Positions 4,001 through 59,446 of a DNA stretch of 64,000 bases are shown here, one piece after another. The stretch lies in contig JBPPKV010000017.1 in assembly GCA_051294905.1 (NCBI GenBank), positions 806,001 to 870,000 of the forward strand, read 5' to 3'. Under the pieces are notes generated by a model. The model was given only the letters and a program-made list of their open reading frames with translations. It made no database searches and was not told the origin of the DNA. The stretch comes from Botryllus schlosseri (lineage: Eukaryota). The translations under genes and the position numbers were made by a program. Position 1 is the first letter of the stretch. Every line of letters starts with the position of its first letter.

Positions 4001-7000
4001 AGTAAATAATTGACTGGTAATCGAACCGTTCAGGAAGGTACTGAGACACCATAGGATTTGTATGGCTGGGGAAAATCGATTCCTAAACGAGTGTTAAGCT
4101 TGTGGTCGATTATTTGAGTATCACTCATTATGACATTTTAACTATAGGCCTACAATGTGTCTACTCTACACTTGAATTTCAGTAGCTGCCCGGATATTCG
4201 ATACATACTTTTACCGATCTTCATACACTTGGGTTGCTTCCGAGTCCATTTTCCATCTCTACCGCAATAGTTGTAGACGTACGCGTTGTCATCATGGTAC
4301 TTGAGTCGGTATCCAATAGCACACTGGTAATATACTCTGTCGCCCGGTTTGTAACTAGCCTTCATCGGTGAATAGACGCCATGTGGTACCATCATATGCA
4401 TACAAGAGCCTGTAAACGATATGATGATATTCGTCGGTTAGAGACATCGGGCTAGTTCGAAATGCATCTACTCCTAGTGGTGCTACCTCAGTACGAGTAG
4501 CCTAAAAGTAGTGGTCTCAAAGGCGTGTCAAAATACTCCAATTCGAAGTAGAAATGGGAGGTTTGAAAAGTATTCAAGTTTCAAAACGTAAAATAGATTA
4601 AAGCGTCGCATAAATATTGTAATCAAACTGAGGTAATCTATTTTCCATATAGAAAAATGCATTTTGATACCATCGCAATGACGAATGACTATTGAAAGAT
4701 TTACGATTCAGGACAATGGTCGAATAAAATATTGAAGTACAGTCACAAAGGACTCTCTCACTCGTGAAAGTGATACAAACCTATCAAAGAACTACTTTCC
4801 GCTTCACAGATTCTGAGGAGTAACTAATTCAGTGCTTTGGTACTAAATCTGTCGGGAAAAAGAAGTAGCCTCGCGTATAAGCATTGAAATTTGAGCACGT
4901 AGTCTGAGTAACCAATGCCTGCTTGAGTACATTAGTAGAATAATTTGGTGACTGATACTGATCGTCTCCAACGGTAAGATGCCATAGTATATGTTTAACA
5001 TTATAAACGCTTCAAACGGAGTATAATGTTTGATACCTGCTGTCATCTTCTTGCACGTTGGCGGCTTCATGTCCCACATGCGATCCTGTCCACAAGTCGC
5101 GTACGAATAGTATTTGCCTTCGTAGTGCTTGTAATATCCCTCGTTACACTTGAAACGGAGTTGGTTACCGACGGAGTACATTTTCCTGCTGGGCTTGAGT
5201 GTGCCATGTTCGAATTTCGGCATTTTGCAGTACACTGTTATCGGAAAATACTAGTCACGCCTTCAGCAGGGGAATGTCTTTGTAAAACATCGGGTAAGGG
5301 TCAGCAAGAAAGCAGACACATTAGAATTACACCAAATTAATCAGTAATGTTTTAGTTGTTGAGTAAGTGCCGCCATAGTTGCTGTAGTTACTATTATACG
5401 TAGAAAAAGTCGTCTCGATATGGAGTTGCAATTTCCGATTATATATATATATTACCCGCTACTGGGCAAAGCATTTGCTGTCTTGTCGTAAGACGGCAAG
5501 TAAATAGTGGTAACACTCTCGTTCGGGACTTGGTCTATATCTCACTAATTGGATAACCAATTTCCTCTTCGTATTTGGTCAAATGAACATGCACGGACAA
5601 AAACGCTGTATGTCAGCATTGTATAATCTTATAGCCTAAAAATAAAATTTCGCTGCATTTCAGGCGATTTCAAATTTTGCCAAAATGATTTTCGGTTGCG
5701 ACTCGTACCGAGTATAATATATTTTAGGTATGAGAGTGTGTTAGATTTCGGTCTTGTGTCAAATAATACTGGTATCGACTAAACGATTCAAAAATTAAAT
5801 TCATAACTTGATATGGCTGTTAGAATAATCGCAATACATACAGTCTACGGTAACGTTACATTGGCCAACCATTCGACGAGAAGAGCACAGGTTCACATTT
5901 TAAAGGACCACATTAAAAAATCTACACGGGATAAGGATTCAGAATTTTTTGCGAAACTGGATTTGGAAATGGAATTTTCAATAATATGAAATTTTCGTGT
6001 TATTACTAACTACTTTATGTGCAGGAATATTCTCGGAATATAGTTTCGATTAACAACAGTTTGACCACTGATTATAAATCGCTCGTAATACTTCCATCAA
6101 CCTACTTTTCTTCATATCCAAGCACTTGGGTGATTTGTACTTCCATTTCCCGTCCATGCAAACGTTATATTCGTATTCTTCTCCTCTGTAAGATTTCTTG
6201 AAGCCCCTGGCACATTGGTAGTAGAGCTTCGAACCTTGTTGATATCTTTCAAACATCGGCCAGTATGATCCATAATAAAATTCCGGCGCGTAGCAATAGC
6301 CTGCAAACAATGGGAACAATGTACACCCAGGTAATTTTAGTCGGCGCCAAACGTACTCATCATCGCCTTCTTGCACATCGGTGGTTTCCTGTCCCAATAC
6401 CCGCCCGGTTTGCACGTAGCGTAGTCGTATCTCTCACCCTCGTAGTAGAGCTTGTAACCGTCTTTGCATTTGTAGCTGACTTTCTCGCCGTACGCATATT
6501 TGGATTTGGACGTCATGACCATACCGTGTTCAATCACGGGAGCATCGCAATGAGCTGAACATAAGTGTGCCGTGTAGAGGTAAGCAATATTTTGCTTTAA
6601 GCTAATTATATGTATCAGCTACTCGATTAAAATCATTGTTAAATAAAACTTGAAGGTTTTAAAATGGGGCAAAGCCGTCAGCATTCCAAGCATACATCTT
6701 GCAATCTTGCATTAACATAGCATTCGAGATTTATTAAAACCCTCCTTCACTCTATTCTGACTTCAGCATTTAATTTTATAGGAATTCGTTTTGATGCTAA
6801 AAGCTATAAGCCAGGGGTGTCAAACATAGGGCCCGCGAAGCTAAGATTGCTAAATTAAAATGATTATATTAGTTCGCACATTTAATTCCAAAGTTCTCTC
6901 TCGACAGCAAATGCGAAGTACGCTCACTGCTCATATACCAAATTATAACATTCTGGCGGCAATGCTGCGCTTTCATAAGTAGCAAGTCGGTGACATTGGT

Positions 7001-27140: not shown

Positions 27141-27634
27141 AGAATAGTATTTACGGGGGCAAATTGTTTAGTTATTTATTATAGATCTACCTCCCGTGAA
27201 TACTATGATTTGATATCTTAAATTTGGACCTCAGTAACTTCGCGTCCGCTGATTGGAAACGAGCCAATTTTGTAGTGTAACGTGTTTTTTTTAGATAGCC
27301 TATCCATGTTAACAGGCAGCTAGTAAAATTTAAAATAGTTGATTTTGAACATTCCTTCATTATTCATAGCTGTGTGCAAAATGCTTTCGATAAACGGCTA
27401 ACTGAGGTTTTTTAGTTCTAATATGAATTATTGACACTGTAAAATAGTAATATTGCTTTAGATCGGTATATATTCTCTTTGCTCAATTAAATCATCTCTA
27501 ACTAGTTGAATCATAACAATCGATACTCCACTCATATTCAAGTAGGCTACCTACCATACAATCGATCCAATGTCTCGGTCGTATATTGTGTGAAAGTCTT
27601 CTTGACAATTGGCTGATTGCCTTTCGTGTCGCAG

Positions 27635-30600
27635 GCTTATCAGATGCGTCCAGCGATCATCTTTTTCGATGAAATCGACGGGCTGGCGCCGGCGCGGTCC
27701 AGCAGGCAGGACCAGATCCATTCGTCCATCGTTTCGACCCTGCTGGCGCTCATGGACGGCCTGGACAACCGCGGCGAAATTACAGTTATAGGTGAGATTC
27801 TGAGTTGCGGTTTTGCTTGCACGTCACGACAATTTTCTTCTGACACAGGTGCTACGAATCGTATTGACTCCATGGATCCTGCCCTGAGACGCCCCGGACG
27901 TTTTGACAGGGAATTCCAATTTTCCTTGCCTGATAAAGAGGTATTCGATGCTTCCTGTTTGTCGAATTCTGTGATTTTTTCTAAATGTATAACATGTGTT
28001 TCTAGGCATTGCCTTTAGTGGGAACAATATATTGAAGTGTAGAAGTGCTTGTGCAGTATCCTCTGATAATTGTCTACCTTAAATTCAAGTCGATTTTTGG
28101 ATTTGATCGCGGGCAAAATATCAGATGTAACCTGTTCAGTGTTCAGCCACCTTTGCATCAACAATATCAATAGAGCCTTATTTTACCGGACGAGATTCTC
28201 CGATCGCCCATATCACAAAATGTGATTTACTACTTCTGCAATCCAGGCCCTGCCAGGAAAAAATCACTTTTTATAAATATATATTTAAAAAGCGTTATTG
28301 TACTTGGTGATGTCTGCGGTCAATGCAGTCAAATCAGCAGAAAGTTGCATTTATTTTTCAGAAAAGTTGCGCTAAAAGTTGCCTTTGTGCTCAAGTTCCT
28401 TGAAATTATTAGGGTATGAGATACTTAAAACACTCCGTATGCAAGGCACTGTTGCAAAACTCAATGTTGGCAACTCAATGAAAATCTCATTTTCGGCGGT
28501 CTAGCCTGAATGTACGTCAAATCAGAAAGGACCTAAATTTTAAATGGCGGTGAAATAATCAAGCGATATATTTACATGTAGTGCCAAAGATTTCCAGTAA
28601 TAAGTAAAAAATAGAGGAGAGTTGCAAAATGTTGCGAGATAAGATTCCTTAAACAGCTTGAAACACCATACTAAATAGCGTCTGAGTATTTAGGAAGCAG
28701 CTGGAAGCTGTAGGAAAACTTGCCCTACCGGACTTTGAAAACAAATTTGAAAACATATTTGTGGCAGATACGTCACCACCCCCGGCTATCCCGTGGCAAT
28801 AACTTGATCAAATTGCCATCGTCACCGTTTGTTAATTACCACCCACTTACCACTGTGACAGGCGAGAGCTTCAATTTTAAAAATTCACACGAGCGAATGG
28901 GACCCACCGTTGAAGCCGACGTTTGTCGATTACCTCGCCAGTAGAACAGTGGGCTACTGCGGCGCCGATCTCCGGGTGAGTGTTAGCTGTCTGCTTTATG
29001 TGGTCAGACTCGCGAACACGTCTTTCAACCATGTAATATGTTTTCAGGCTCTTTGTGCGGAGGCGTCGCTGGTGGCTTTGCGTAGAAGGTACCCGCAGAT
29101 CTACGAAACCTCGGACAAGCTTCAAATTGACGTTGATTCTATTTCTATCGAATACAACGACTTCACAACTGCTATCCAGGTAGATGCCTGTATTTTATTT
29201 GTTGTTAGTTTTCTGCTGTGTTGATATTTATATTCAGAGGCAGTCAGTAACATACAGTCAGTGATTCTAGATGTACATTAATGTATCAAACTTTCCGCCA
29301 TGAAAACTATCACTTCAAATCCAAAATTTTGAACAACGATTGGAGAGGCACGATAGTGACTTTACGATATTACAGTTTCAAACATTCCGATACCATGGAT
29401 CTGTCTGAAAAGTACTTTTTAGCCATCTTTTCCTTCTGCATCCCGGCACCCCTATTTTGTGGCAAAATTTCCATTAGTATTCCAGATAATTCAGTTTTGA
29501 CGGTTGTACGAGTGTTATCGGTATGTTGATGTTTTTCCAGACAATCCTACCTAGTTCGCAGCGGTCCGCCGGCAGCCCGGGACGCGCGCTGTCCGCTAAA
29601 ATGAAGCCTTTGCTGCTGTGCTACTTGAAAAATATCGTGCAACAACTCGCCGGATTGTTGCCGCAGCTCAAAGGTTTGTGTTGTCTTACTTCGATTGGTC
29701 GATAGCATTGACAAATAATATCCAACCCTTATTTTGCCGTAGCAGACTACGACTAATTGAGCTAATTGTCGCAAAATTCTAACTTTAATCTAATTTGTGA
29801 AATGTTTCCCTGCTCCAACTCAATCCAATTTATGAACTACATCTATGGTGTCATTCGAATAATAATTGAATTTCTGGTTTTCCTGAAAATACTGCAGAAC
29901 TGTATAATGAGACAAACGAGTCAAGTTTGCTGCGCGGACATTTGTCATTCTCTTGCTTACTACAATGAACTCTGATTTGGTGTGAATTGATGCTGATTCA
30001 ATTTTCAAGTTTTCTTGGATTCAGTGATTCTAGTCTGATATGGAGGAAACTGTGCTGCTGTAATTCTAATCTTATTTGGAAGATGTGAATATTTTCTAGT
30101 TGGCAATCTCTGTATCGCAGTAGCTTAGGTTTTCATTGCGCTGTGTGCATAGGCGCCGAACGCTAATTTTCCTTAGACATGCGAGTTTGATGACGTCACA
30201 GAGGAATGATTTCATGATCCGACGGAATTGATAATTAGGGATAATATAGCATCAATTCATGAGGGTTAAGTGCCTGCATAAATGCCAATTATGCAATATC
30301 TTCGTGTTAACAAACTTGCGCGTATGATAAGCTTGTCGACGAGTCCGGAAGTGCTGTCAATTAGCGAGTCCCTGATCGCTAGCGAACAATTAAATACGCC
30401 GCTTATCAACGCGTATTACGTAACCTCGGCGACGATTTGCGCAAGGCAAAATGTCCGAGTTGTTATGGAATCTGTTCTATAATGGCACCGATTTCAGGTT
30501 GTTCAAACCTTTCTCGTCTTTTACAACTCAAGCCTTGACAGTTGACACACATCTTCTGATGGTTATGTTTAGGTATTAGCGGAATTCACTTGCGCATGCA

Positions 30601-37481: not shown

Positions 37482-39084
37482 GCAGCTATACACCCACGTA
37501 CTGGATATTGAAAAGCGGTTTTGCAAATGATAACCGTAGGCTTAGTGATAAACAGCAACAAAATGACTATTCTTGAAAATAATATCATGCTATTCACGTA
37601 GAAATTGGGTTGACTTCTATTATTTCAAAGCAAATTCTGCAACTTCATTTCTTCAAATACGCGGTCGTGTCTTGAAAATCCGCTCCTTCGATTTGATATG
37701 AACAAGTGCCGAAAATTCATTTCCACAAATAGAGATGGTGGCAAATGTAATAATCACGCGTTACGCGTAATTATCGAATGTAGCGTAACGCTTCCGACAA
37801 CACATTTGGGTATATGATCGCAACAAATATTGCACTAAACCTATGTTGTCCTACAATCGTTGACCGCTAGACTGGGACTATTGCTGTATTTCATATAGCT
37901 TACGCATTCAAAGTATCCAGATGTAGCCTTTCTAGTTTATTTCATGTTCGAATATGACAATGGCTGTAAAGCTGTTGATATAAATGCTCTGCGGTTTTGA
38001 AAATGCGCCTTTTAAGGTAGATTCCATCACCACGTGAACAATATGAAATTCAGGTTCATGATCCAGCTCCATTTCCTGGCCGAGCCCGTAATATGGCCTT
38101 CTGTCTCAAGATCGAGTCATACCTTTTTCTTACGGATGGACCTGTCCATTGTTTGTATATAGAGGCTATTATTCCTCCATCAATTTCTAGCTACTGGAGC
38201 GAACAGTACATTATGACATCATACGAATAATTTCGTCGTCGGGCGTACATGCCCTAACCACATGCGATTTTGAGACAGATAAGCTTAGACTTGAAAAACC
38301 AGACGATTTTAGATCTCTATAATTCGACTGATTAGAGCGAAATGCCGGACATCAAAACAATGGGTTCTCACACCGCATGAAATTTGTTTTTCGCGCTTGT
38401 TCGCCCCTTTGCATTTTCTGAGTCATGTTCGCACAGGTACGGCTGGCCCCATGTTGATGATTATGTTGTCTGCTGACTAATTTCGAAGTAACATGCACTG
38501 TAACAATGATCAAGTGTTGGCATATCGGCGACTGTTGCTTGAATCGTCATTTTTTTTGGTTGCGGTCTTCCATGGTGACAGTTCAGAAAAGGTAGATAAA
38601 CGGTCGCAGATTTTGCTGATAGATACATACTTTTCGCCTACGCCCAAGGTTAACACGCTATATACTACTTCTACGATGCTGTCTACAGTGTCTGTAGAAT
38701 GTACATGTAAAATAGTCAAATATGTGATTATACGGTTTGCCGAAACCACGTTTCGAAAACGATTACACGAAAAACGGTCTGGTTTCGGCATACGTGACGC
38801 AGCGTCGTACGCCGTGTCGGGAAGTAGCACTACTCGCAGGAGATTGTCAGAAATTGTTTCCCACAACCGCATAAGCGATACCACGATAAGATACAGAGCA
38901 TGTCGCATGAAGCCGGGTATCTCCGATTCGTTGAAATTGTACTTTTGTCCACTTTCCAACCGGTACGAACTACGAAAAGTGAGAAATAGTGCGTTGGTAA
39001 AATCAATACCCGGCTCCGCGAAAGGCAACGACACGCCAATGATGGCGAACGCAGAAAAACGAGCAGAGCCCACCGCACGAACAA

Positions 39085-39790
39085 TAAAAGATGTTTATAT
39101 CCATCTACCTTGGATTGGCCCCATTTCCACCCGCTTTGAAAAACAATTGATTTCTGCTGTCGGTAAATGTTACGATACAGTCAAAACCAATGTGATTTTT
39201 ACAACAACACAACTGCTCCCTTCAACACGCAAAGACGTGCTTCCTGCACTTCAACAAAGTAATGTAGTGTACGAATATAGGTGCCACTGTGATTGTGGCT
39301 ACGTGGGAAGAACGTCAAGACGTCTGCAGGACCGCATAAACCAACATGTCCCCAGATTTATCAGAACACGTGCGTCACGCGATGTGAAAAGCTCACCCTT
39401 AACTCATCCACTTAAGATTGATGCTGATCGATCAAAGGCCATTAATTCTGCCATCGGCAAACATCTGTTGGATAATCCGATTTGTGCGAATAATTATCGA
39501 GACGACCGATTTCGAATCGTAGGTCGAGGTCGTTCACAATTCCATTTGTGTGCCTTGGAATCAACTTTTATCAAAATACACCAACCAAAACTCTGTCAAC
39601 AAAAGTAGTTCGTGTATCACCTAAAAATAGTACATTGAACGTTCTCTCATTCGAAATTTCATGCTGGTGACGTCATATTTTGTGATACGATTGTTGATAT
39701 ACAATGTTCTTTCCAATTCTCTACTAGTTGCTGACGATTACCCCTGACGAGTGTCAGCTGAAAATATTCGGATTCATTTCAATATGAATA
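39085..39790 (+). mobile_element. Penelope-like retroelement, 5'-truncated (RT C-terminal tail, GIY-YIG endonuclease, 3' end)
   Basis: VYIHLPWIG...KDVLPALQQSNVVYEYRCHCDCGYVGRTSRRLQDRINQH...SAIGKHL...FRIVGRGRSQFHLCALESTFIKIHQPKLCQQK is the characteristic PLE GIY-YIG C-terminus. No RT catalytic motif was found. Confidence 0.85.
39738..39774 (+). ncRNA. Degenerate minimal type I hammerhead ribozyme-like motif in PLE 3' end
   Basis: ttaccc-CTGACGA-gtgtcagct-GAAA-ATAT-TC-ggatt. The second copy (49705-49742) has a perfect aaccc/gggtt stem I but a mutated core. Stem II pairs poorly. Confidence 0.35.
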
Positions 39791-45574: not shown

Positions 45575-46855
45575 CAGTGGTTCCCAAACGGTGGGGAATT
45601 CAATGGTTTCTGGTGGGGAATAGACCCATTTGTTCAAAATTAATCACAGGACAGTCTTCATATTCACGGAGACACACGCGCAATTACCGATACCAGTTAG
45701 CTGCTCTGGAATGTATGTATCGAACATTATATTGCGTGTTGTTAACAAATCCTCGTTTGAACTCTGGATGGCCAATGATGGCGTCACAAACGCATCCAGC
45801 ACGACTAGTTTGACGTGAGAAAACGGTTTCGCGAAATTTTGAGCGTTGCTGGTATCCGTTCACAGTAGCCTACGTTTTACGTTGCAGTTATAGGTGATTG
45901 TCTTGTGTACTGGTGTGTCTTGTGTAGTCAAAGCAGCAAATAGCTGCTCTATGATGACAAAAGTGTTGGGTAGTGGGGAACAGGACCGTAACTGCCGCAC
46001 GCCAAACCCCCCAATTATTGGGGGGGGGGGGCGAGCTCGAAGGGGACCAAAAGGATTTCGTGAATTAACATAAATGATAGAGTATTTTTTGGAAATTGAT
46101 GTCAATTTTTCAAGTTGTTTTTTTTTTGCGCGGCGCGCGCGATTTAATATTGTCAAATATCTTGATTATTGGGTACTCATCCCCCACGAAGATACGTAGA
46201 ATTTAAAGAAATGAAGACTTCAGCGTATGCTATTACTGCGCCACGACGCACCAAGACATGTGAAGTTATAGACCATGTAACATGCGTGTGTGCCAGGACG
46301 ATCAGCGAGTAAACCTCGGCCGAGAAGGAATGCCCTTGTGGTGACCGAAAACTTATATGTATGTATTGTATATACAATATACATATATGTTCAATTGTCC
46401 GGCGGCGGCTAAATTGCTGGTGCCAAATGTTCCCGTTCTGGCAATTGGAACCCCACAGTACAAATGCCATCCCGCAAGGAAAAATTATTTGCCAGTGAAG
46501 CAATACAAATTAGATTTCCATGTCTTTTGACATAGCAGATATAGGAGGTTACGAAATAGCATCATGTAACGAAGTCAATGTGTCAACGGGTCTGCCCGAT
46601 GATGTTCAATTCATATTTAGGGGTCGTACCTTTTCCAAGATACCTCACTCAGCTCTACCGGTAAATCTGATTACGTAAGCAGAGAGGGGATAAAAAATTG
46701 ATAGCAAATTATAGGCCAAACCCGATCATATTGACCGAATCAAACATGAATTAAATAAATTTTTAGCGCTTCGCGCGTTTACGATCCTGGTGGGGAATGA
46801 AGGCTCGGAATAAATCCGAAGTGGGGAATGAACACAAAAAGGTTGGGAACCACTG
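45575..46855. mobile_element. Family A non-autonomous hAT-type element (~1.3 kb)
   Basis: TIR CAGTGGTTCCCAA. Interior shared with 50280-51143 (same orientation) and 60779-62692 (inverted). Confidence 0.85.
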
Positions 46856-50279: not shown

Positions 50280-51143
50280 TTCCTCTGTCTATTGACCGAA
50301 GTCATATTTGAGAATTCTCTCATCAACAGCCATAACCTTTAATGTATAGGTCATGTAACATGTGACTCCGAGAAGTGTGCCAGAACGATCAGCAGCGAGA
50401 AGACCTTGACCGAGAAGGAATGCCCTTGTGGTGACCGAAAACTTCGATGTAAATACAATATACATCATACATATATGCTTAGTTGTCCATCGGCGGCTAA
50501 ACGGCCTGCGCCGAATGTTCCTGTCCTGGTGATCTGAACCCCACGGGACAAATGCCGTCACGCATAGAAAAATTATTTGCCAAAGCAATACCAATTTGAA
50601 TTCGTGTGTGCTTTTTAGTTTTGGTGATTTCCATATCTTTTGACATGGCAGATATAGGAGGTCATGATATAGCATAATGTAACGAAGTCAATATACCAAC
50701 GGGTCCGCCCGAAGCTGTTTAATTAATATTTAGGGTTCCTACCTTTTCCAACACACCTCACTCAGCTCTACCGGTAAATCTGATAACGTGAGCATAGAGA
50801 GGGGATAAAAATTGATAGCAAAATATATGCAATTCCCGATCATATTGACCGATTCAAACATGAATTATATAAATTTTTCGATCTTCGCGCGTTTTGTCGA
50901 AATAAGGCGGCGCACTAAACAGTGGACCCAATGTAGATGATAAGTAGCGGGGAAAAATGTACAGGCTCAGGGGGGCTGAGGGGGAAACCCCCCCCAGAAG
51001 TTGGGTTAATCACCCAGTGGGGGCCCAAGACCAACGTTTTTTTTTGGAGGGGGTTGACGAAGTGCTGTTACGGTTCTGATGGGGAATGAAGGCCCGCAAT
51101 AAATCTGATGTGGGAATGAAGACAAAAAGGTTGGGAACCACTG
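50280..51143. mobile_element. Family A partial copy
   Basis: CCGAGAAGGAATGCCCTTGTGGTGACCGAAAAC...AAAAGGTTGGGAACCACTG matches 46310-46855. Confidence 0.85.
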
Positions 51144-51968
51144 CTCTACACCAATCTTAACTCGTTTCGCAAGATACAGGTCTCTTGTAGCTTTTATAAA
51201 AAAAAACAGATGTTAGATTAGAATTAGAATTAGAACAACATGTCACAAATTAGATTAGAACTATAATAGTGTCATTCGCTCTAATTATTTCAATTAGATA
51301 ACTAGATTTATCTATAGTTGTCCAAGTCTGCTATGGTGTTATAGTTGCCGGATCAATGGATGACCTAACTCACATTACTTCTCTGTGCCTATTGGTTGTG
51401 GAATATATAAAGTTATAAGAAATGGACGTGTCAGGGGTGTTTTGTAAGAATTTTTGGCGATACAAATTTTAAGAAACCACTTTAATTTTTCCGCAATACG
51501 TACATGTTTGAAGTCAGGAAACAACGAGTAGACACTAACTAGCAGCAATAACCTTGATGAAGAACGAGCAAGTACAATTTGTATGTAAACGATTTGCGGG
51601 TGTATGTAACGACAAGGAGTTAACGAGACAACTGAATTCGAAAGATTGCGTACATATGACGGACGAAATATGTTTCAGGACAGTAACGAAAAACCGGAAT
51701 GTCGTTCGTCATCTGTCCTTTCCGGATTGCTCCTGTACTATCGTGAAAAAATGTTTGCGAGAGTGGTGTATCAATTACATGGATGTCTGCACTTGTCAAT
51801 ATTAGAATGGAGAGGAATTTAATCACAATCACTTCAAACTGAACTCTCACGTCCTCGCTTGTATTAAATCGAATCACTGCTATTTTATTACGAGTTTTAT
51901 TAACTGAAGTAAAATATATTGGTAGCCTATAGATCTCGAATACATAGAATACACTGCACACTTATTAG

Positions 51969-52658: not shown

Positions 52659-54203
52659 CGAAAGAACGTCACCCGAATATCGCATGAAACCGATTGGATG
52701 CTTTGGTCTAGGAGTGTTAACTGTGTAGTGTGTAGCCTGCGGGAGCGCAACTATTATATGAACTTGCATTCCGGCGCTGGGAATTTTCACGCAATAGAAT
52801 ACACGACCTGGACGTATAGTTTCGCAAAACATGCGACCATGCGGCCTCCGTGCGGAGTGTGCGTTGCCAAAATGATGGCTGGCGATAAAACCTTGAAACA
52901 AAATAACCGCCTCGTGTTGACCAAAACGTTCGCCCCGTGTCGAAATGCAAATTTGGAACCGTGTTCGTCTCTCGGCAGGAGATATACTTTTAGTTTCGTC
53001 TGGTGTGCATGCGATTCCAATATATCTGGAGCAACGACAATCTTTTCTGCTTTACCGCGACCTTTGCAGGTCTAATGTCAGATCAACCTTACTGTGACAC
53101 CAAACCGACTTGAATGATACAGTGGTATGGGCAAACTTATTCCCTTCGCGAGCAATAATATAATTCAAGAATAACTGGCGTAACGGATGCCGTTGCCAGG
53201 TGCAGGGAAACGATTGGTTGTATTCCTTGCTTGAAACGGTAAATAATAATTAATTGAATGTTTGACACTCGAGCTGGTAATACTTTGGCATTTTTTGACA
53301 TTTTGGCACCTGCACACAAAAAGTTGCCGGCCCCTGCACTATACAACTACAATTCTATCTAAGATTTGCTACTATGCCACAGAAAGCTGCGATTATGAAG
53401 CTATTCGATCGCAGGAATGAACACAGTTGTTTAACATGGAGACCTAATATATGTACCTGTCAGTGTGATTATACACGCGCTTCCGTGGCCAAGAAATACG
53501 AATCACATAAGCCATTCTTCATCCCAAGTCAAACATTTCCGTTCGATTCGTTAGTTGTTATACATATAAAAGCGCATCCCATATCAATCAGCAGGGTCAC
53601 ACACTGAGATCACAAATTGAAAAGCGAGCACTGGTCTAAAACAACACGTGTCCGCTCAACGTTTATATTCATGTCGTTTCCACACAAAATTGTACACTCC
53701 CGTCTCCCGACCCTTCCAGTGTTGTTAACCGATGGGACAAAGATTAGTCGATCCCGTTGTCTGATACGCGTGTTTCCGCGGCCACGAAACACGAATGACA
53801 TAAACTATATCCTTCTGCCTCGTAAAACATTTCCGTTAGACTCGTTATACCAATAAAAGCGCATTCCATCGCAAGAGGAAGATGGTCAGTGTCACATAGT
53901 TAAATCCCTGCCTAGATACTTGGACTAGAGAATAGACCCGTCACGTTACCGAAAAAATATGCCCAACGATACAGTTTACGCAACAGACCCATTCTAAGAC
54001 GCAGTGACGAACACAACGTCTTGGGAATTTGGAAATGGTAGCAACAATGCAAGCCAGGAACTGTGGTTCTTACGGTATTAATTCAGCGTACAGCAACTGA
54101 TTATGGTACTGACAACGAGCGGATTTGCCCATACTTAAATTGTACCGATGCGAATACACTGTAGCCTACCTACACATCAATGGCAAGTTTCGTGTCGTAT
54201 CGG

Positions 54204-54210
54204 TATAAAA
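54204..54210 (+). promoter_or_regulatory. TATA box candidate for the cystine-knot gene
   Basis: TATAAAA about 95 nt upstream of the proposed ATG at 54303. Confidence 0.4.
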
Positions 54211-54302: not shown

Positions 54303-55047
54303 ATGAAGGTATACGCTATTCAGTATCCACGCCTACCATGAAAATCGTTTTACAACGCCATTTGGCGTTTATTACGTTTACGTTATACTGGTTAATCCTC
54401 CGTTTAATAAACATACAAGTCACGATAATCGACGTTCGTTACGGTATTTATGATCCGTTTCGACTTCTCTTACCTGCCCCGATGATAAGAACTTTGTGGA
54501 CTCACTTTGCTAGTAAACAAGTTAACCTTCGTTTTGTCACAGGGGACAGCCGTGTGCATAACTGCTGTGTTATTACTACTGAGCGCGACGGGCGGATGCA
54601 GGCCTACCAAAGAATTACGATTCGGGTATGTGTGATTGATAAATACCGAGATTATGATTAGATCATTATGAATATCCAACATGCGAATTGATCGGTGATA
54701 TCCAAATACTGCCCCCTCGTAATGAAAGTATTACTATTAACAGGACGGTACCGAAAGTGTCCAGACGACGTTGTAAAATCACCAGCTTAGCAATGGTCAG
54801 CGAATCGATGGTACCGCACATCGACGCTAAGGTCGCATGCAAGGATGGGGTGAAATTTACCACCAAACTATGCCCGCAAAAACTCTGTCAAGATCCGGTG
54901 ACCATGCAGATACTTCGAAGTGCGAAGAGCAAAGGCGAATATAGGGTTGAAAGAATAACGAAGCAGGAGTTGGGTAAAATGGATAGCGGGAGATACACCA
55001 GAGTAACAATAGCCACAGGTTGCCGGTGCGTCTTTCGGAAGAGATAA
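54303..55047 (+). CDS. Small secreted cystine-knot protein, IL-17-like Cys spacing (~130 aa, 3 exons)
   Basis: Exons 54303-54308 (ATG AAG|gt), 54543-54625 and 54744-55047 splice in phase. Product: MKGTAVCITAVLLLLSATGGC RPTKELRFGTVPKVSRRR C...C...CPQKLC-x44-CRC VFRKR. It has a hydrophobic signal peptide, a basic RRR site and six mature Cys. The first exon and exon-3 acceptor are inferred. Confidence 0.65.
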
Positions 55048-56557
55048 ATCTTCTATCAATTTAAATTAAACATACTTTAATTTCTATTCTTTGTCATCCA
55101 ACGGACAGTCCCTGGGCGAACGTGTGTCGATTTCAAGTGTGCAGTCTTGCTATAATGACAAGGCTGAGAAGCTACCTTGCAACCATTTTGTACCATTAGC
55201 TATGCAAATAACTCAGCACTGTGTAAACTATAATGCGTGTCGGTAATTCTGCTATAAACTGGTCATGGTGATATCGTTGCCAATTCTATTTAGTATTTTT
55301 TGGTGTAGAATTTTCGTTCTCCGAAACTTCATTATTGCGTCACGCAGCTTATTCCTCTCCAAGCAATCATTGGATCAGATATTGCCAAGTAACGGTCCCG
55401 TAGCCAATAAATACGGGTCTTGTACCAATAATATAGAACTTGAATTTATACTACCATGTATTTATACTGCAAATAACAATAAATACAATACATGTATTGT
55501 TGCTGCACATCATTTCGTAAAATGCGAAATTTGGGAAAATTACTTGTACAAAATAAGTTCAAACATTTACCAGGTGCAGACTGATACGCTATGAGCTCCA
55601 AGACGTGTGGTGTGATGTCACTGGCAGGGAAATCGCTTTGATAAGTGTATAGGTATGAGATGGATACGGAGGCCTTGTGTAATTTACCAGACGATTTTCA
55701 TACTTTTTGCGGTCTTGAAAGGCGTGATATTGTACCACATATAACATAGTCTGTTGGGCAGTAAACTGTGCGTGGAAATATACGAGAAATGTTACATTTC
55801 ATACATAATCTTGGCCTCTGGCACTCACAATAGAACGTCTTGTCTATATTCGGGGGTATGACCCTATCAGGTCCCTGAACATATAAAGGCTGGGAAATTC
55901 CGGGCTCCGATACAGCAAATACACCACAGGTTCGTAGGATATTGCACTGTAAACGTAATTCGTGTATTTCGCCGATTTCCCTCGTTGTGTAAGGTGGAAA
56001 ACGGCACTTTCTGAGTATAATATTTGGATTTCACGCCCATCCCAATGGGTGAAAATGAGTCGAATACTCCAGCCCTTATGGAGTGTGTTTCGTGTGCCAC
56101 CCTACGACGGCGCGAAAGATTGTATCCACGATTATGGAAATAACTATAATATCATATTTAACATTTTGTCATAACAACATGAAAAAATTCGTAATTTCAT
56201 GGCGTACCTCGTCCTTACAACCCTAAAGTTGGACCCCCTACTAATTCCATAATCATGTTTGAGTGGAGAATCCGCAGGTTGGGAACTACTGCTCGAAGGC
56301 GGAGATCATAGAGTTAGCTTATCCAGGAGAATGGTAATCGTCTAATTAAAACTGCTAATCGTGGCGCATAAAATTGGATAACATTTTGGTGAGACTTTTA
56401 ACCCAGCGGCCAGCGCAGTAGGTTTGCCACCAGTAACAGTTTTTAATCAGACGATTAGCATTCGCATCGCGACCCTATATCCATTTGTCACGTGGCAGTC
56501 GAAAATAAATACCCCCCCGTTTAATCCTAGCCAAGTCCCCGCCAATAATCACATCAC

Positions 56558-57083: not shown

Positions 57084-58002
57084 CTTATGCGGTAATGTTT
57101 GAGACAGCTTGTACCACGCATGTTAACAGTCCTTTAGGCAAAACAACTTAATTTTTGAACTTAGGATTTTGTAATGTGGAGAGTAAGTAGCTTTAGGGCA
57201 TGCCACAATCCCCTTTGTGAGTTGTTATTGTTGTTTTTTGTTGTGATGTTAATACCACAAAAATAGAATAGGCCTACAGCTCATACCAAATCAGCAGGTC
57301 GTGTTGTTTTCGGCATTTCGGGAACCAAAATAAGTGTAAAATCCCAAAAATGAGCTATTTTTTGGTATATTTGGCACCTACCAGAATATAGATGTTTCTG
57401 AAAGTTTTAAATAGAAATGTAAACAAGTATTGAAACGAGTCTGCATGAAGCGACAAAACAAGTGTGTAACGCTAAATTCCTAAACTAAGGCCTGTGAACC
57501 CTTCGGAAGGCCGCGGTCTACCGTCCAAGAGATCTATGTAATGAAAATAGTCGAGTACTGATACCTGGATTTACAATATACTGTTGATTGATCAACCCGG
57601 GTAGTAAATGATATCCAGCAAATAGAGGGATGTAGCTAAATGCCAAGGAATTTTCCTGTCGTCACCTCTCGTGCATTTTTGTGACATCACGAAGCCGACA
57701 CGCGCGACCCTTGCTGTATTCAAGTCGACGCGTATATAATCCCATTTACTTTCAACTTGTTAATGAAAATGTCAGCATGTCGTGCAATCACGTTGGACAA
57801 TAGCAGGGTTACCATGCGTCCTCATTTTTGAAGAAATGTACCCCTTCGCCTAAATGTTTTTTAGGCCAATATCATATCGTTAAAAAGTGGGTAATTCAGG
57901 TGTCAAGTCAAAGCGCAGAACTTTTTTAGTCAACACAACATGATTTCCAGTAAATATTTGAAACCAACTTTCCCTATTTCAAAATATGGTAACCCTCTAG
58001 AG

Positions 58003-59446
58003 CAGTGGTCGGGAACCTTTTTTGTCCGAAGAGCCATATTGACCCCATATTTTCCATCTTAACTTCCAACGAGCCATACGTTTTAATCAACTAATACGTC
58101 ACAATTGAAAAATTGGGACGTCATGTTAGCGTAAATTCGTCGACTTTCGTCAGTTACACGGGATCGTAGGTTCGTCTTGACGATATTCTTAAATGCGAGG
58201 ACCCATGGGGGACATAAGTAGGCGGAGTCAAACATGATGGTCACTACACAGCAGCATGCATACCAACTGTAATGTGTGATGCGTCAGTGACGTGGTTTCA
58301 GGGGTGGCACGTGAGGCAGTGCCTTACCTGTCTACTAGATTTTGAACATTTTTACTACGAAAATCACGCAACTTACCTATTTATTGTTCGAAAATATAGC
58401 GTGAAAGGGGAGGTAAGACATTGGTGAGGCACGGCCGGGATTAGCATAGCGCAATTCATCGTAAATATCATATACTTTATAATAACTGATAACACTTGAC
58501 TGGTCAACACATATTTTAGGCATCCAAAGTAAGAGTGTGTTTGGTGGTTCTGGAGGGCGCTGATTCTGAAAATGACCTTGGTTTTCTCAAATTGGCTCTT
58601 GTTTTGTAAATAACCCATGGGACGACATGAGGGTTCTTCATAGTCAATTATTATCTATTGAAGTGCAGTATAAAATTAAAAAAACTACGATTTTCTTCTT
58701 GCCAAGTGTATTCAATGGTAAATAGAGTAATTTTGGACTTTTTGAGGGGTACAAGAGCCAATCTCTAATTACTAATGTAATATTCATAATCAGCAACCTC
58801 GAAAACCCCAGAAACGGCTTTTAGATGTTCTGCCCAATTTTCTTTTCGTTCTGTTGACCAGTGTAATAATTGAATGTAATAGCCGCACCGATTCCGATTC
58901 GATTTCTCAATTCTCAAAGTATTCGTCGGTAACACAACGTTGTGCCACACGCCTACATTTGAACAGCAACTACAAAGCTTCGTTTTCAATCAAGAACGTG
59001 GATCACTATGGCGTTGTTTGTAATTTGAATTTGTAATTGTGAATGTCAATTCCACGGAGTTCATTTCTCGCCGTAGATCAGGAAGACAATGTGTATTTGA
59101 AAACTGCATTGTCATACAGGCGTCGCCTTGTCTGCTATTCTCATTGAGCAATCAACGCATCGTGCAATCCGAGATTTCGTGGCGCATGCGAGACGAGACA
59201 GCAACTTAGATTTGATGATTTTGAAACGGGGTCCGAGCCCCTAACCCTGAATACGCCACTGTATTCACCTCTCAAAGACATGTTTATACTGCCACAAGAA
59301 TGATTATACTGGTCGTGCTGAAGATTTAATAACAAGTTGCTGCAATATTGATCAATTATGCACAAAATTAGAATTTTCGCAAAGAGCCATACTTTTTGCC
59401 CAAAAGAGCCATATATGGCTCGCGAGCCATAGGTTCCCGACCACTG
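58003..59446. mobile_element. hAT-type composite MITE
   Basis: TIR CAGTGGTCGGGAACCT at both ends. Flanks CTCTAGAG / (ca)GTCTAGAG. Nested CAGTG-ended element at ~58285-59261. Confidence 0.75.

What the first reader, a model, noticed from the sequence alone, without database searches (positions are those of the whole stretch)
54303..55047. Hidden three-exon secreted cystine-knot gene with IL-17-type CxxxxC-x44-CxC spacing but no IL-17 signature upstream
Seen: the ORF track misses the signal peptide because it is split over a 6-nt exon and an 83-nt exon. The spliced model gives a signal peptide, an RRR site and six Cys. CPQKLC to GCRC is separated by 44 residues, the same as CRHLGC to GCTC in human IL-17A as recalled, and VTIATGCRCV resembles ILVSVGCTCV. 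The usual IL-17 PW..D..R.P..EA.C motif is absent. Two extra Cys follow the basic site, more like processed growth-factor knots (neurotrophin, spaetzle or trunk-like). Inference: a divergent, possibly lineage-specific cytokine or growth factor.
Basis: partly seen in the sequence, partly recalled or inferred. Interest (0 to 1): 0.7.

Follow-up and report, generated by a model that had tools for sequence, protein, structure and literature searches.

The report
Hidden sea-squirt IL-17-like cytokine gene
A small three-exon gene, for which I found no annotated protein, encodes a secreted six-cysteine protein of a tiny orphan family in what earlier notes of this scan call a sea-squirt genome; its predicted shape is closest to the immune signal interleukin-17, so it is a plausible but unproven, very divergent extra member of that cytokine class.

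Summary
Exons 54303-54308, 54543-54625 and 54744-55047 join through GT..AG introns into a 130-aa protein. It has a signal peptide, an RRR site and six later cysteines (C-x21-C-x10-C-x4-C-x44-C-x-C).

The gene family is real. A search of 1.84 billion cluster representatives found three unannotated homologues (48-30% identity). They share all six cysteines, PH, TTK and CRCV. Two have DNA, and both show a phase-2 intron before the last exon. One also reproduces the mini-first-exon/signal-exon layout.

No Pfam or PDB sequence match exists. An AlphaFold model built on the four-sequence alignment (pLDDT 68, pTM 0.53) matches cystine-knot cytokines only. IL-25 and IL-17A come first (Z 5.6-6.0, TM about 0.5), ahead of NGF and Spätzle (Z about 4). 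Language-model features of two of three members also point to IL-17.

The knot lacks the Cys1/Cys4 bond, as published for tunicate and vertebrate IL-17s. An extra invariant cysteine pair probably staples an N-terminal hairpin. The IL-17 "DPNR.P..EA.C" motif is absent. The RRR site is not conserved, so the processed-neurotrophin idea is weak.

The scan already found canonical IL-17 clusters elsewhere in this genome, but not this gene. No transcript evidence was obtainable.

The parts
54204..54210 (+). TATA-box candidate (TATAAAA), 99 nt upstream of the ATG
   Evidence: Only TATAAA in the 400 nt upstream. The two ATGs after it (54220, 54231) lie at or before the expected start of transcription. 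Inference; no transcript data.
54303..54308 (+). Coding part of exon 1: ATG AAG, then donor gtatac (phase 0)
   Evidence: Donor score 4/7. An alternative, ATG|gtcagt at 53882, cannot be excluded. L002 has an analogous ATGTTTCAG|gt mini first coding exon.
54309..54542 (+). Intron 1 (234 nt, GT..AG, GC 0.39)
54543..54625 (+). Exon 2 (83 nt): hydrophobic core of the signal peptide, probable cleavage region (ATGG/C) and a short basic linker. It ends with GG of a split Gly codon.
   Evidence: It is the best hydrophobic phase-2 exon candidate upstream of exon 3. The L002 counterpart (4678-4754) also ends F-GG|gt.
54626..54743 (+). Intron 2 (118 nt, GT..AG, phase 2, GC 0.34)
   Evidence: A phase-2 intron sits at the equivalent place in L001 (acceptor 814-815) and L002 (acceptor 5278-5279).
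54744..55047 (+). Exon 3: the whole conserved domain (100 aa) plus the stop codon
   Evidence: Homologues align over residues 2-100. AlphaFold model.
54763..54771 (+). RRR, directly before the first invariant Cys
   Evidence: Not conserved in the family (RRRC, GHRC, TQGC, KRKC), so a processing role is doubtful.
54772..54840 (+). Extra invariant cysteine pair, C40 and C62 of the precursor (exon-3 residues 10 and 32), with a fixed 21-residue gap. They flank predicted strands 11-18 and 25-31.
54814..54819 (+). Invariant Pro-His, 18 residues before the C-x4-C. It lies near where IL-17s carry S-P-W/Y.
   Evidence: Compared by eye with the Ciona IL-17 sequences read. A lead, not a test.
54871..54888 (+). 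C-P-Q-K-L-C: knot cysteines 2 and 3 (C-x4-C), preceded by the invariant TTK
   Evidence: The Ciona and sea-urchin IL-17s also have C-x4-C.
55021..55029 (+). C-R-C: knot cysteines 5 and 6, within the invariant CRCV motif and followed by a basic tail
   Evidence: Matches 6 of 8 positions of the IL-17 motif 2 core [VI][APT]V[GA]CTC[VA].
55065..55070 (+). ATTAAA, candidate polyadenylation signal 18 nt after the stop (AATAAA also at 55406 and 55478)
   Evidence: Inference only.

Best explanation
This is a real three-exon gene for which I found no annotated protein. It encodes a small (130 aa precursor, about 100-110 aa mature), very basic (pI about 10) secreted protein.

It belongs to a tiny orphan family with the pattern C-x21-C-x10-C-x3/4-C-x40-47-C-x-C. 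The domain most likely adopts an IL-17-type 'open' cystine knot. Two disulfides (C73-C123 and C78-C125 of the precursor) would tie strand 2 to strand 4. There is no Cys1/Cys4 bond, which matches the published T2 type of tunicate and vertebrate IL-17s. A family-specific extra disulfide (C40-C62) would staple an N-terminal beta-hairpin.

By analogy it would act as a dimeric extracellular ligand for an IL-17-receptor-type (FN3 plus SEFIR) receptor in immune, inflammatory or wound signalling.

Shown: the gene model, the family, the conserved cysteines and intron phase, and the fold ranking. Inferred: disulfide pairing, dimerisation, receptor and biological role.
For: Gene and family:
- Canonical splice sites give a 393-nt CDS.
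- Exon/intron GC contrast and a TATA candidate.
- Three homologues at E = 6e-21 to 5e-5 among 1.84 billion representatives.
- 16 invariant columns, including all six Cys.
- The same phase-2 intron in L001 and L002, and a parallel three-exon model with a signal-like exon in L002.

Fold:
- The AlphaFold model with the family alignment has pLDDT 67.8 and pTM 0.53.
- Foldseek against the PDB gives TM 0.49-0.56, rmsd 3.8-4.0 Å and probability 0.97-0.99 to IL-17A.
- In the VIA second look, all 50 top entries are IL-17A, IL-17F or IL-25, with Z 5.2-6.0.
- The Foldseek-independent scan of 48,161 chains puts IL-25 (5.8) and IL-17A (5.6) first. They are followed only by other cystine knots (NGF 4.2, Spätzle 4.1, Norrin, Gremlin, TGF-beta and others) for about 25 rows.
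- The Atlas shape search has an IL-17 cluster first, TM 0.49.
- AFDB gives IL-17B and an amphioxus IL-17-like protein with probability 0.93-0.99.

Language-model features: the IL17 family is the commonest named hit for the window protein (0.88, 176-178 features) and for the 30%-identical L002 protein (0.90, 180 features).

Literature:
- 29 of 34 vertebrate IL-17 genes have two introns.
- Ciona IL-17s read show C-x4-C and I-A-x-G-C-x-C-V followed by basic residues.
Against: - No sequence-level link. Pfam IL17 (PF06083) gives no hit at E up to 10 for any of the four members. Neither the single-sequence nor the profile search of PDB sequences finds IL-17.
- IL-17 motif 1 (DPNR.P..EA[RK]C) is absent.
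- Only one of five AlphaFold models exceeds pLDDT 60. The single-sequence model gives only noise hits.
- Z of about 6 is in the range the tool itself calls 'middling'. The margin over NGF and Spätzle is modest.
- Language-model features of the third member (L001) point nowhere.
- No transcript, no receptor data and no coordinates to check disulfide geometry.
- The identity of exon 1 is not unique.
Confidence: 0.55

Rival explanations
1. It is a secreted cystine-knot ligand of another branch, related to neurotrophin, Spätzle, Trunk/PTTH or Noggin. It would be made as a pro-protein and released by cleavage at the basic site, then signal through a Toll-, Trk- or Torso-type receptor.
For: NGF, Spätzle, Norrin, Gremlin and PTTH all appear in the structural hit lists. 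Spaetzle, NGF and Noggin clusters appear among the language-model neighbours. An RRR or KRK run precedes the first Cys in two members.
Against: - These families keep the full six-Cys knot with a Cys1/Cys4 bond. Here no conserved Cys lies between knot Cys 3 and 5.
- Their structural scores are lower (Z 3.0-4.2, TM about 0.3) than those of IL-17 (Z 5.6-6.0, TM about 0.5).
- The basic site is not conserved, and the 'pro-region' would be only about 18 aa.
- No Pfam NGF, Spaetzle or Noggin hit.
Confidence: 0.12
2. It is a lineage-specific secreted cysteine-rich protein that is not a cytokine, for example an antimicrobial or defensive peptide, a tunic or matrix component, or a binding protein. Its IL-17 likeness would come from a medium-confidence model and a common C...C-x-C pattern.
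For: - It is very basic (pI 10.2; 23 K+R in 100 aa), as in many antimicrobial proteins.
- No sequence homology to any known family.
- Four of five AlphaFold models are poor, and the single-sequence model gives unrelated hits.
- One family member gives no IL-17 signal in the Atlas.
Against: - An unbiased scan of 48,161 PDB chains returned almost only cystine-knot ligands in the first 25 rows. A random beta-rich model is very unlikely to give that.
- Two members only 30% identical independently recall IL-17 clusters.
- The cysteine geometry equals that of IL-17s.
Confidence: 0.25
3. It is not an expressed gene: a decaying or never-transcribed ORF whose splice model is fortuitous.
For: No transcript evidence could be obtained. 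No protein of this species with this sequence is in the 15-billion-protein collection. ORFs of about 100 aa are common in this window. The gene sits alone in repeat-rich DNA.
Against: - Homologues at 28-49% identity keep an open frame, all six Cys, and the same intron phase in the two with DNA.
- The signal-peptide exon lies where needed in two loci.
- Coding GC is raised relative to the introns.
Confidence: 0.08

Closest known systems
Interleukin-17 family (Pfam PF06083; human IL-17A/F, IL-17B and IL-25; Ciona IL-17-1/-2/-3 and IL-17D-like)
   Same: - A small secreted protein with the domain at the C-terminus, in the last exon of a three-exon gene.
- C-x4-C ... C-x-C with 40-47 residues between them.
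- No Cys1/Cys4 bond (T2 type).
- The C-terminal [VI][AT]x[GA]CxCV motif followed by basic residues.
- The best structural match (Z 5.6-6.0, TM about 0.5).
   Different: - No HMM-detectable similarity.
- Motif 1 (DPNR.P..EA[RK]C) is missing, and S-P-W is replaced by V/A-P-H.
- The loop after knot Cys3 is only 2 residues before the conserved Pro.
- There is an extra invariant C-x21-C pair upstream of the knot.
- No serines at the Cys1/Cys4 positions.
- It is a solitary locus, not part of the genome's IL-17 cluster.
Neurotrophins (NGF), Spätzle, Trunk/PTTH
   Same: Cystine-knot superfamily fold with a C-x-C in the last strand, a basic protein, and a basic run before the domain in some members.
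   Different: Those have a complete three-disulfide knot, a long pro-domain with a conserved convertase site, and different Cys2-Cys3 spacing. Structural scores are lower here (Z 3.0-4.2).
DAN/sclerostin, Norrin, CTCK knots
   Same: They appear in the hit lists, and they share two long beta-hairpin 'fingers'.
   Different: By established knowledge of these families, they carry C-x-G-x-C rings and 8 or more cysteines. That was not tested here. Scores are lower (Z 2.8-4.0).

Membership tests
IL-17 (PF06083) | Significant match to the Pfam IL17 profile or to IL-17 sequences | tested here: not met
   No Pfam hit at E up to 10 for any of the four members. No IL-17 chain appears in the PDB sequence or profile searches at E up to 10.
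IL-17 (PF06083) | Four knot cysteines arranged C-x4-C ... C-x-C | tested here: met
   C43-x4-C48 and C93-x-C95 (exon-3 numbering) are invariant in four sequences. One member has C-x3-C. Ciona and urchin IL-17s show the same arrangement.
IL-17 (PF06083) | T2 type of tunicates and vertebrates: the Cys1/Cys4 disulfide is absent (PMC11087794) | tested here: met
   There is no conserved Cys between knot Cys3 and Cys5, and the residue before the invariant P-H is V or A. The serines usual at these positions are not present.
IL-17 (PF06083) | Motif 1: DPNR[IYF]Pxx[IL]xEA[RK]C (PMC4517768) | tested here: not met
   The 18 residues before knot Cys2 read ...KDGVKFTTKL-C. There is no DPNR, no second Pro and no EA[RK].
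IL-17 (PF06083) | Motif 2 core: [VI][APT]V[GA]CTC[VA] | tested here: inconclusive
   The window has I-A-T-G-C-R-C-V, which matches 6 of 8 positions. The family consensus is [VT][AT][TI][GA]CRCV.
IL-17 (PF06083) | IL-17 fold (two beta-hairpins tied by two disulfides) | tested here: met
   IL-17A, IL-17F and IL-25 are the best matches in four independent libraries or aligners. The model is only medium-confidence (pLDDT 68) and Z is about 6.
IL-17 (PF06083) | Homo- or heterodimer that binds an IL-17R (FN3-SEFIR) receptor | not testable with these tools
   No multimer prediction or binding assay was available.
IL-17 (PF06083) | N-terminal signal peptide | tested here: met
   The spliced model gives MK plus a 14-residue hydrophobic core plus small residues. 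This was judged by eye and a hydropathy scan. SignalP was not available.
Neurotrophin / Spätzle / Trunk | Complete six-cysteine knot including the Cys1/Cys4 bond | tested here: not met
   There is no Cys4 equivalent. The two extra Cys both lie upstream of knot Cys2.
Neurotrophin / Spätzle / Trunk | Long pro-domain removed at a conserved basic site | tested here: not met
   The linker between the signal peptide and the first Cys is about 18 aa. The basic site varies: RRR, GHR, TQG, KRK.
Neurotrophin / Spätzle / Trunk | Pfam NGF (PF00243) or Spaetzle (PF16077) match | tested here: not met
   No hit.

The most novel reading that the evidence does not exclude
The four sequences define a previously undescribed, tunicate-restricted branch of the IL-17 superfamily. 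In it, the canonical receptor-contact motif 1 has been replaced by a disulfide-stapled N-terminal hairpin. Such ligands might pair with the very divergent IL-17-receptor-like genes that earlier notes of this scan report elsewhere in the same genome. That would be a private ligand-receptor axis parallel to the canonical IL-17 cluster.
Probability: 0.25. Interest if true: 0.6.

Novelty: new variant of a known kind. Interest (0 to 1): 0.4.

Why it matters
IL-17 is one of the few vertebrate-type cytokines with clear invertebrate roots, and tunicates are the sister group of vertebrates. A family that keeps the IL-17 knot geometry but has lost every sequence signature that HMMs rely on shows two things. 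Cytokine repertoires in tunicates are under-counted by annotation. Tiny first coding exons also hide signal peptides from ORF-based gene callers.

If the protein binds one of the divergent IL-17R-like receptors of this genome, it would give a tractable example of ligand-receptor co-divergence. If not, it remains an ordinary orphan secreted protein.

Tried and rejected
1. Sequence homology to known families found nothing. This covers Pfam on the window protein and on all four members, and PDB phmmer and profile searches.
2. The word-indexed 5.8-billion-protein search found nothing with the single sequence. With the profile it returned only the same three proteins.
3. The JGI metagenome scan with the family profile gave 159 pattern matches, none confirmed.
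4. The single-sequence AlphaFold model is poor (pLDDT 52) and its Foldseek hits are NUDIX-type noise. It served as an informal negative control.
5. Paralogues: tblastn of all four members against the window and both loci shows a single copy each.
6. Signal exon in L001: none is recognisable in the 815 nt available.
7. Sample identity: only SAMN08714533 was traceable, to marine biofilm metagenomes. The two Logan runs were not found in papers.
8. Transposon or virus context: no Pfam domain in ten flanking ORFs and no framing repeats of note.
9. Profile-profile comparison with an IL-17 alignment was not run. No tool returned IL-17 sequences by reference, and long sequences may not be typed. The Ciona sequences in a paper supplement were compared by eye only.
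10. The DNA of the closest homologue, P0001, could not be fetched because the sample file is too large.

Full report
**1. Observation**

ATG AAG at 54303-54308 is followed by gtatac. Exon 2 (54543-54625, 83 nt) follows the acceptor ttttgtcacag and ends GG|gtatgt. Exon 3 (54744-55047) follows attaacag and ends with TAA.

The joined CDS is 393 nt and encodes 130 aa. It reads M-K, a hydrophobic core, small residues (ATGG), a short basic linker, RRR, and then a 91-residue domain with six cysteines.

The exon-2 ORF has no in-frame ATG, and its mechanical start is a TTG. That is why ORF lists show no signal peptide. The spacing of the cysteines after RRR is 21, 10, 4, 44 and 1.

Supporting signs:
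- CDS GC is 0.49 against 0.34-0.39 in the introns and 0.40 in the window.
- There is a single TATAAA, 99 nt upstream of the ATG.
- ATTAAA lies 18 nt after the stop.

One caveat: exon 1 is not uniquely determined. An ATG|gtcagt at 53882 would give M- instead of MK-. This hardly changes the protein.

**2. Is it a gene?**

An exhaustive phmmer search of 1.84 billion cluster representatives gave exactly three hits: P0001 (E = 5.8e-21, 48% identity), P0002 (1e-6) and P0003 (5e-5). Each is a singleton cluster without a name. They come from two Logan run assemblies and one ENA metagenome. That ENA sample belongs to marine-biofilm metagenomes.

The four sequences are 28-49% identical. They share 16 invariant columns: six Cys, P-H, G, T-T-K, P, V and C-R-C-V.

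In the two homologues with DNA, the conserved ORF is preceded by an AG acceptor that leaves one base of a split codon. This is a phase-2 intron, as in the window. In L002 a hydrophobic exon (4678-4754) ends F-GG|gtaagt, just as the window exon ends F-GG|gtatgt. It is itself preceded by a possible ATGTTTCAG|gt mini coding exon. Joined, these give a 136-aa precursor.

A family that keeps frame, cysteines and gene architecture at 30% identity is under selection, so I take the gene as real. No transcript evidence could be obtained. The collection holds neither this ORF nor its spliced product. Each locus carries one copy.

**3. What fold?**

Sequence methods find nothing in Pfam (E up to 10, all four members) or in PDB sequences, whether searched with the single sequence or with the profile.

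AlphaFold with the single sequence is poor (pLDDT 52), and its Foldseek hits are unrelated NUDIX hairpins. With the four-sequence alignment the best model reaches pLDDT 67.8 and pTM 0.53. It is all-beta, with strands at 11-18, 25-31, 37-42, 66-80 and 83-97. The other four models stay below 57.

That model matches as follows:
- Foldseek against the PDB retrieves NGF and IL-17A/F. TM is 0.49-0.56, rmsd about 4 Å and probability up to 0.99 for IL-17A, against TM about 0.3 for NGF.
- In the VIA-align second look, all 50 top entries are IL-17A, IL-17F or IL-25, with Z 5.2-6.0.
- A Foldseek-independent scan of 48,161 representative chains puts IL-25 (5.8) and IL-17A (5.6) first. NGF (4.2), Spätzle (4.1), Norrin, Gremlin, TGF-beta, GDNF, PDGF, PTTH and others follow. 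Practically the whole first 25 rows are cystine-knot ligands.
- The Atlas shape search puts an IL-17 cluster first, TM 0.49.
- The AlphaFold DB returns IL-17B and an amphioxus IL-17-like protein.

Language-model features point the same way. IL17 is the commonest named family among neighbours of the window protein (0.88; 176-178 shared features). The same holds for the 30%-identical L002 protein (0.90; 180). It does not hold for L001.

No single number is strong, and the tool warns that Z below 8 is 'middling'. The homogeneity of the hit lists still makes a cystine-knot cytokine fold likely (about 0.75). IL-17 is the closest class.

**4. Which kind of knot?**

PMC11087794 classifies IL-17 knots by their disulfides. 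Tunicates and vertebrates keep only type T2, which has lost the Cys1/Cys4 bond. PMC4517768 says the same and gives three MEME motifs.

The family here has knot Cys 2, 3, 5 and 6 as C-x4(3)-C ... C-x-C. It has no conserved Cys between Cys 3 and 5. So it is T2-like and unlike NGF, Spätzle or Trunk.

Its C-terminus (I-A-T-G-C-R-C-V followed by basic residues) fits 6 of 8 positions of the motif 2 core. It resembles Ciona IL-17D-like (I-A-I-G-C-T-C-V-R-R-R, read).

The invariant P-H, 18 residues before Cys2, lies roughly where IL-17s have S-P-W/Y. This is a by-eye comparison and only a lead.

The two extra invariant cysteines are always 21 residues apart. They flank the first predicted hairpin and probably bond to each other. 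They do not restore the knot's third bond.

The '44' spacing that matched human IL-17A is not a family constant; it ranges from 40 to 47.

The RRR site is not conserved (RRRC, GHRC, TQGC, KRKC). It would remove only about 18 residues, so convertase processing in the manner of neurotrophins is not supported.

A two-intron gene is the usual vertebrate IL-17 layout: 29 of 34 genes.

**5. Mechanism proposed**

After signal-peptide removal, the basic domain of about 100-110 aa would fold as an IL-17-type open knot. Like other members of the class, it would dimerise and bind an FN3-type receptor ectodomain, triggering SEFIR/CIKS-type signalling. Everything beyond the fold ranking is inference. I put about 0.55 on 'IL-17-type knot ligand' and about 0.35 on actual IL-17R-type signalling.

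The rivals are another knot family (0.12), a non-cytokine secreted cysteine-rich protein (0.25) and a non-expressed ORF (0.08).

**6. Context and earlier notes**

Flanking ORFs have no Pfam domains, and no repeats frame the gene.

Earlier notes of this scan were not checked by me. They say the genome is a sea squirt. They also say it holds a canonical five-to-six-gene IL-17 cluster, a divergent three-exon IL-17 gene, and an array of divergent IL-17R-like genes on other pieces. The present gene is not one of those. The scan had no look-alike by sequence, but the operators warn that such a blank means nothing.

**7. Verdict**

Family membership is not proven, because the profile test and motif 1 fail. 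I file it as a new variant of a known kind, of moderate interest.

Noticed in passing
window 46177-46503 (-) and 50289-50675 (-): Two ORFs share a 47-residue stretch at 55% identity (E = 3e-16). They are probably two diverged copies of a dispersed repeat or transposon. Neither has a Pfam domain.
   Followed up: partly
window 53528-53587 and 53822-53874: Two short direct-repeat families sit 287-294 nt apart (84-88% identity). This looks like an old tandem duplication of about 290 bp, roughly 450 nt upstream of the gene's TATA candidate.
   Followed up: no
window 51124-51148 and 57998-58022: A 25-nt inverted pair (84% complementary) lies 6.8 kb apart and brackets the gene. It is most likely two oppositely oriented copies of a small repeat rather than a mobile unit carrying the gene.
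   Followed up: no
window 38493-39608 (+): The longest ORF of the middle of the window (371 aa) has no Pfam match. It overlaps a 187-aa ORF on the other strand. It may be transposon-derived.
   Followed up: partly
window 27617-28018 (+): An exon-like ORF carries the second half of an AAA ATPase domain (PF00004, E = 2e-17).
   Followed up: partly
L002 4503-4516: An (AT)n/TATA-like run lies about 85-95 nt upstream of the proposed ATG of the L002 homologue, a distance similar to that of the window's TATA. Two short upstream ATGs lie between them.
   Followed up: no
contig of P0001 (Logan SRR25569784; no DNA fetched): A 42-aa ORF was called 152 nt upstream of the homologous ORF. This mirrors the 42-aa exon-2 ORF of the window (54507-54635). 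It is probably the signal-peptide exon of the closest homologue.
   Followed up: no
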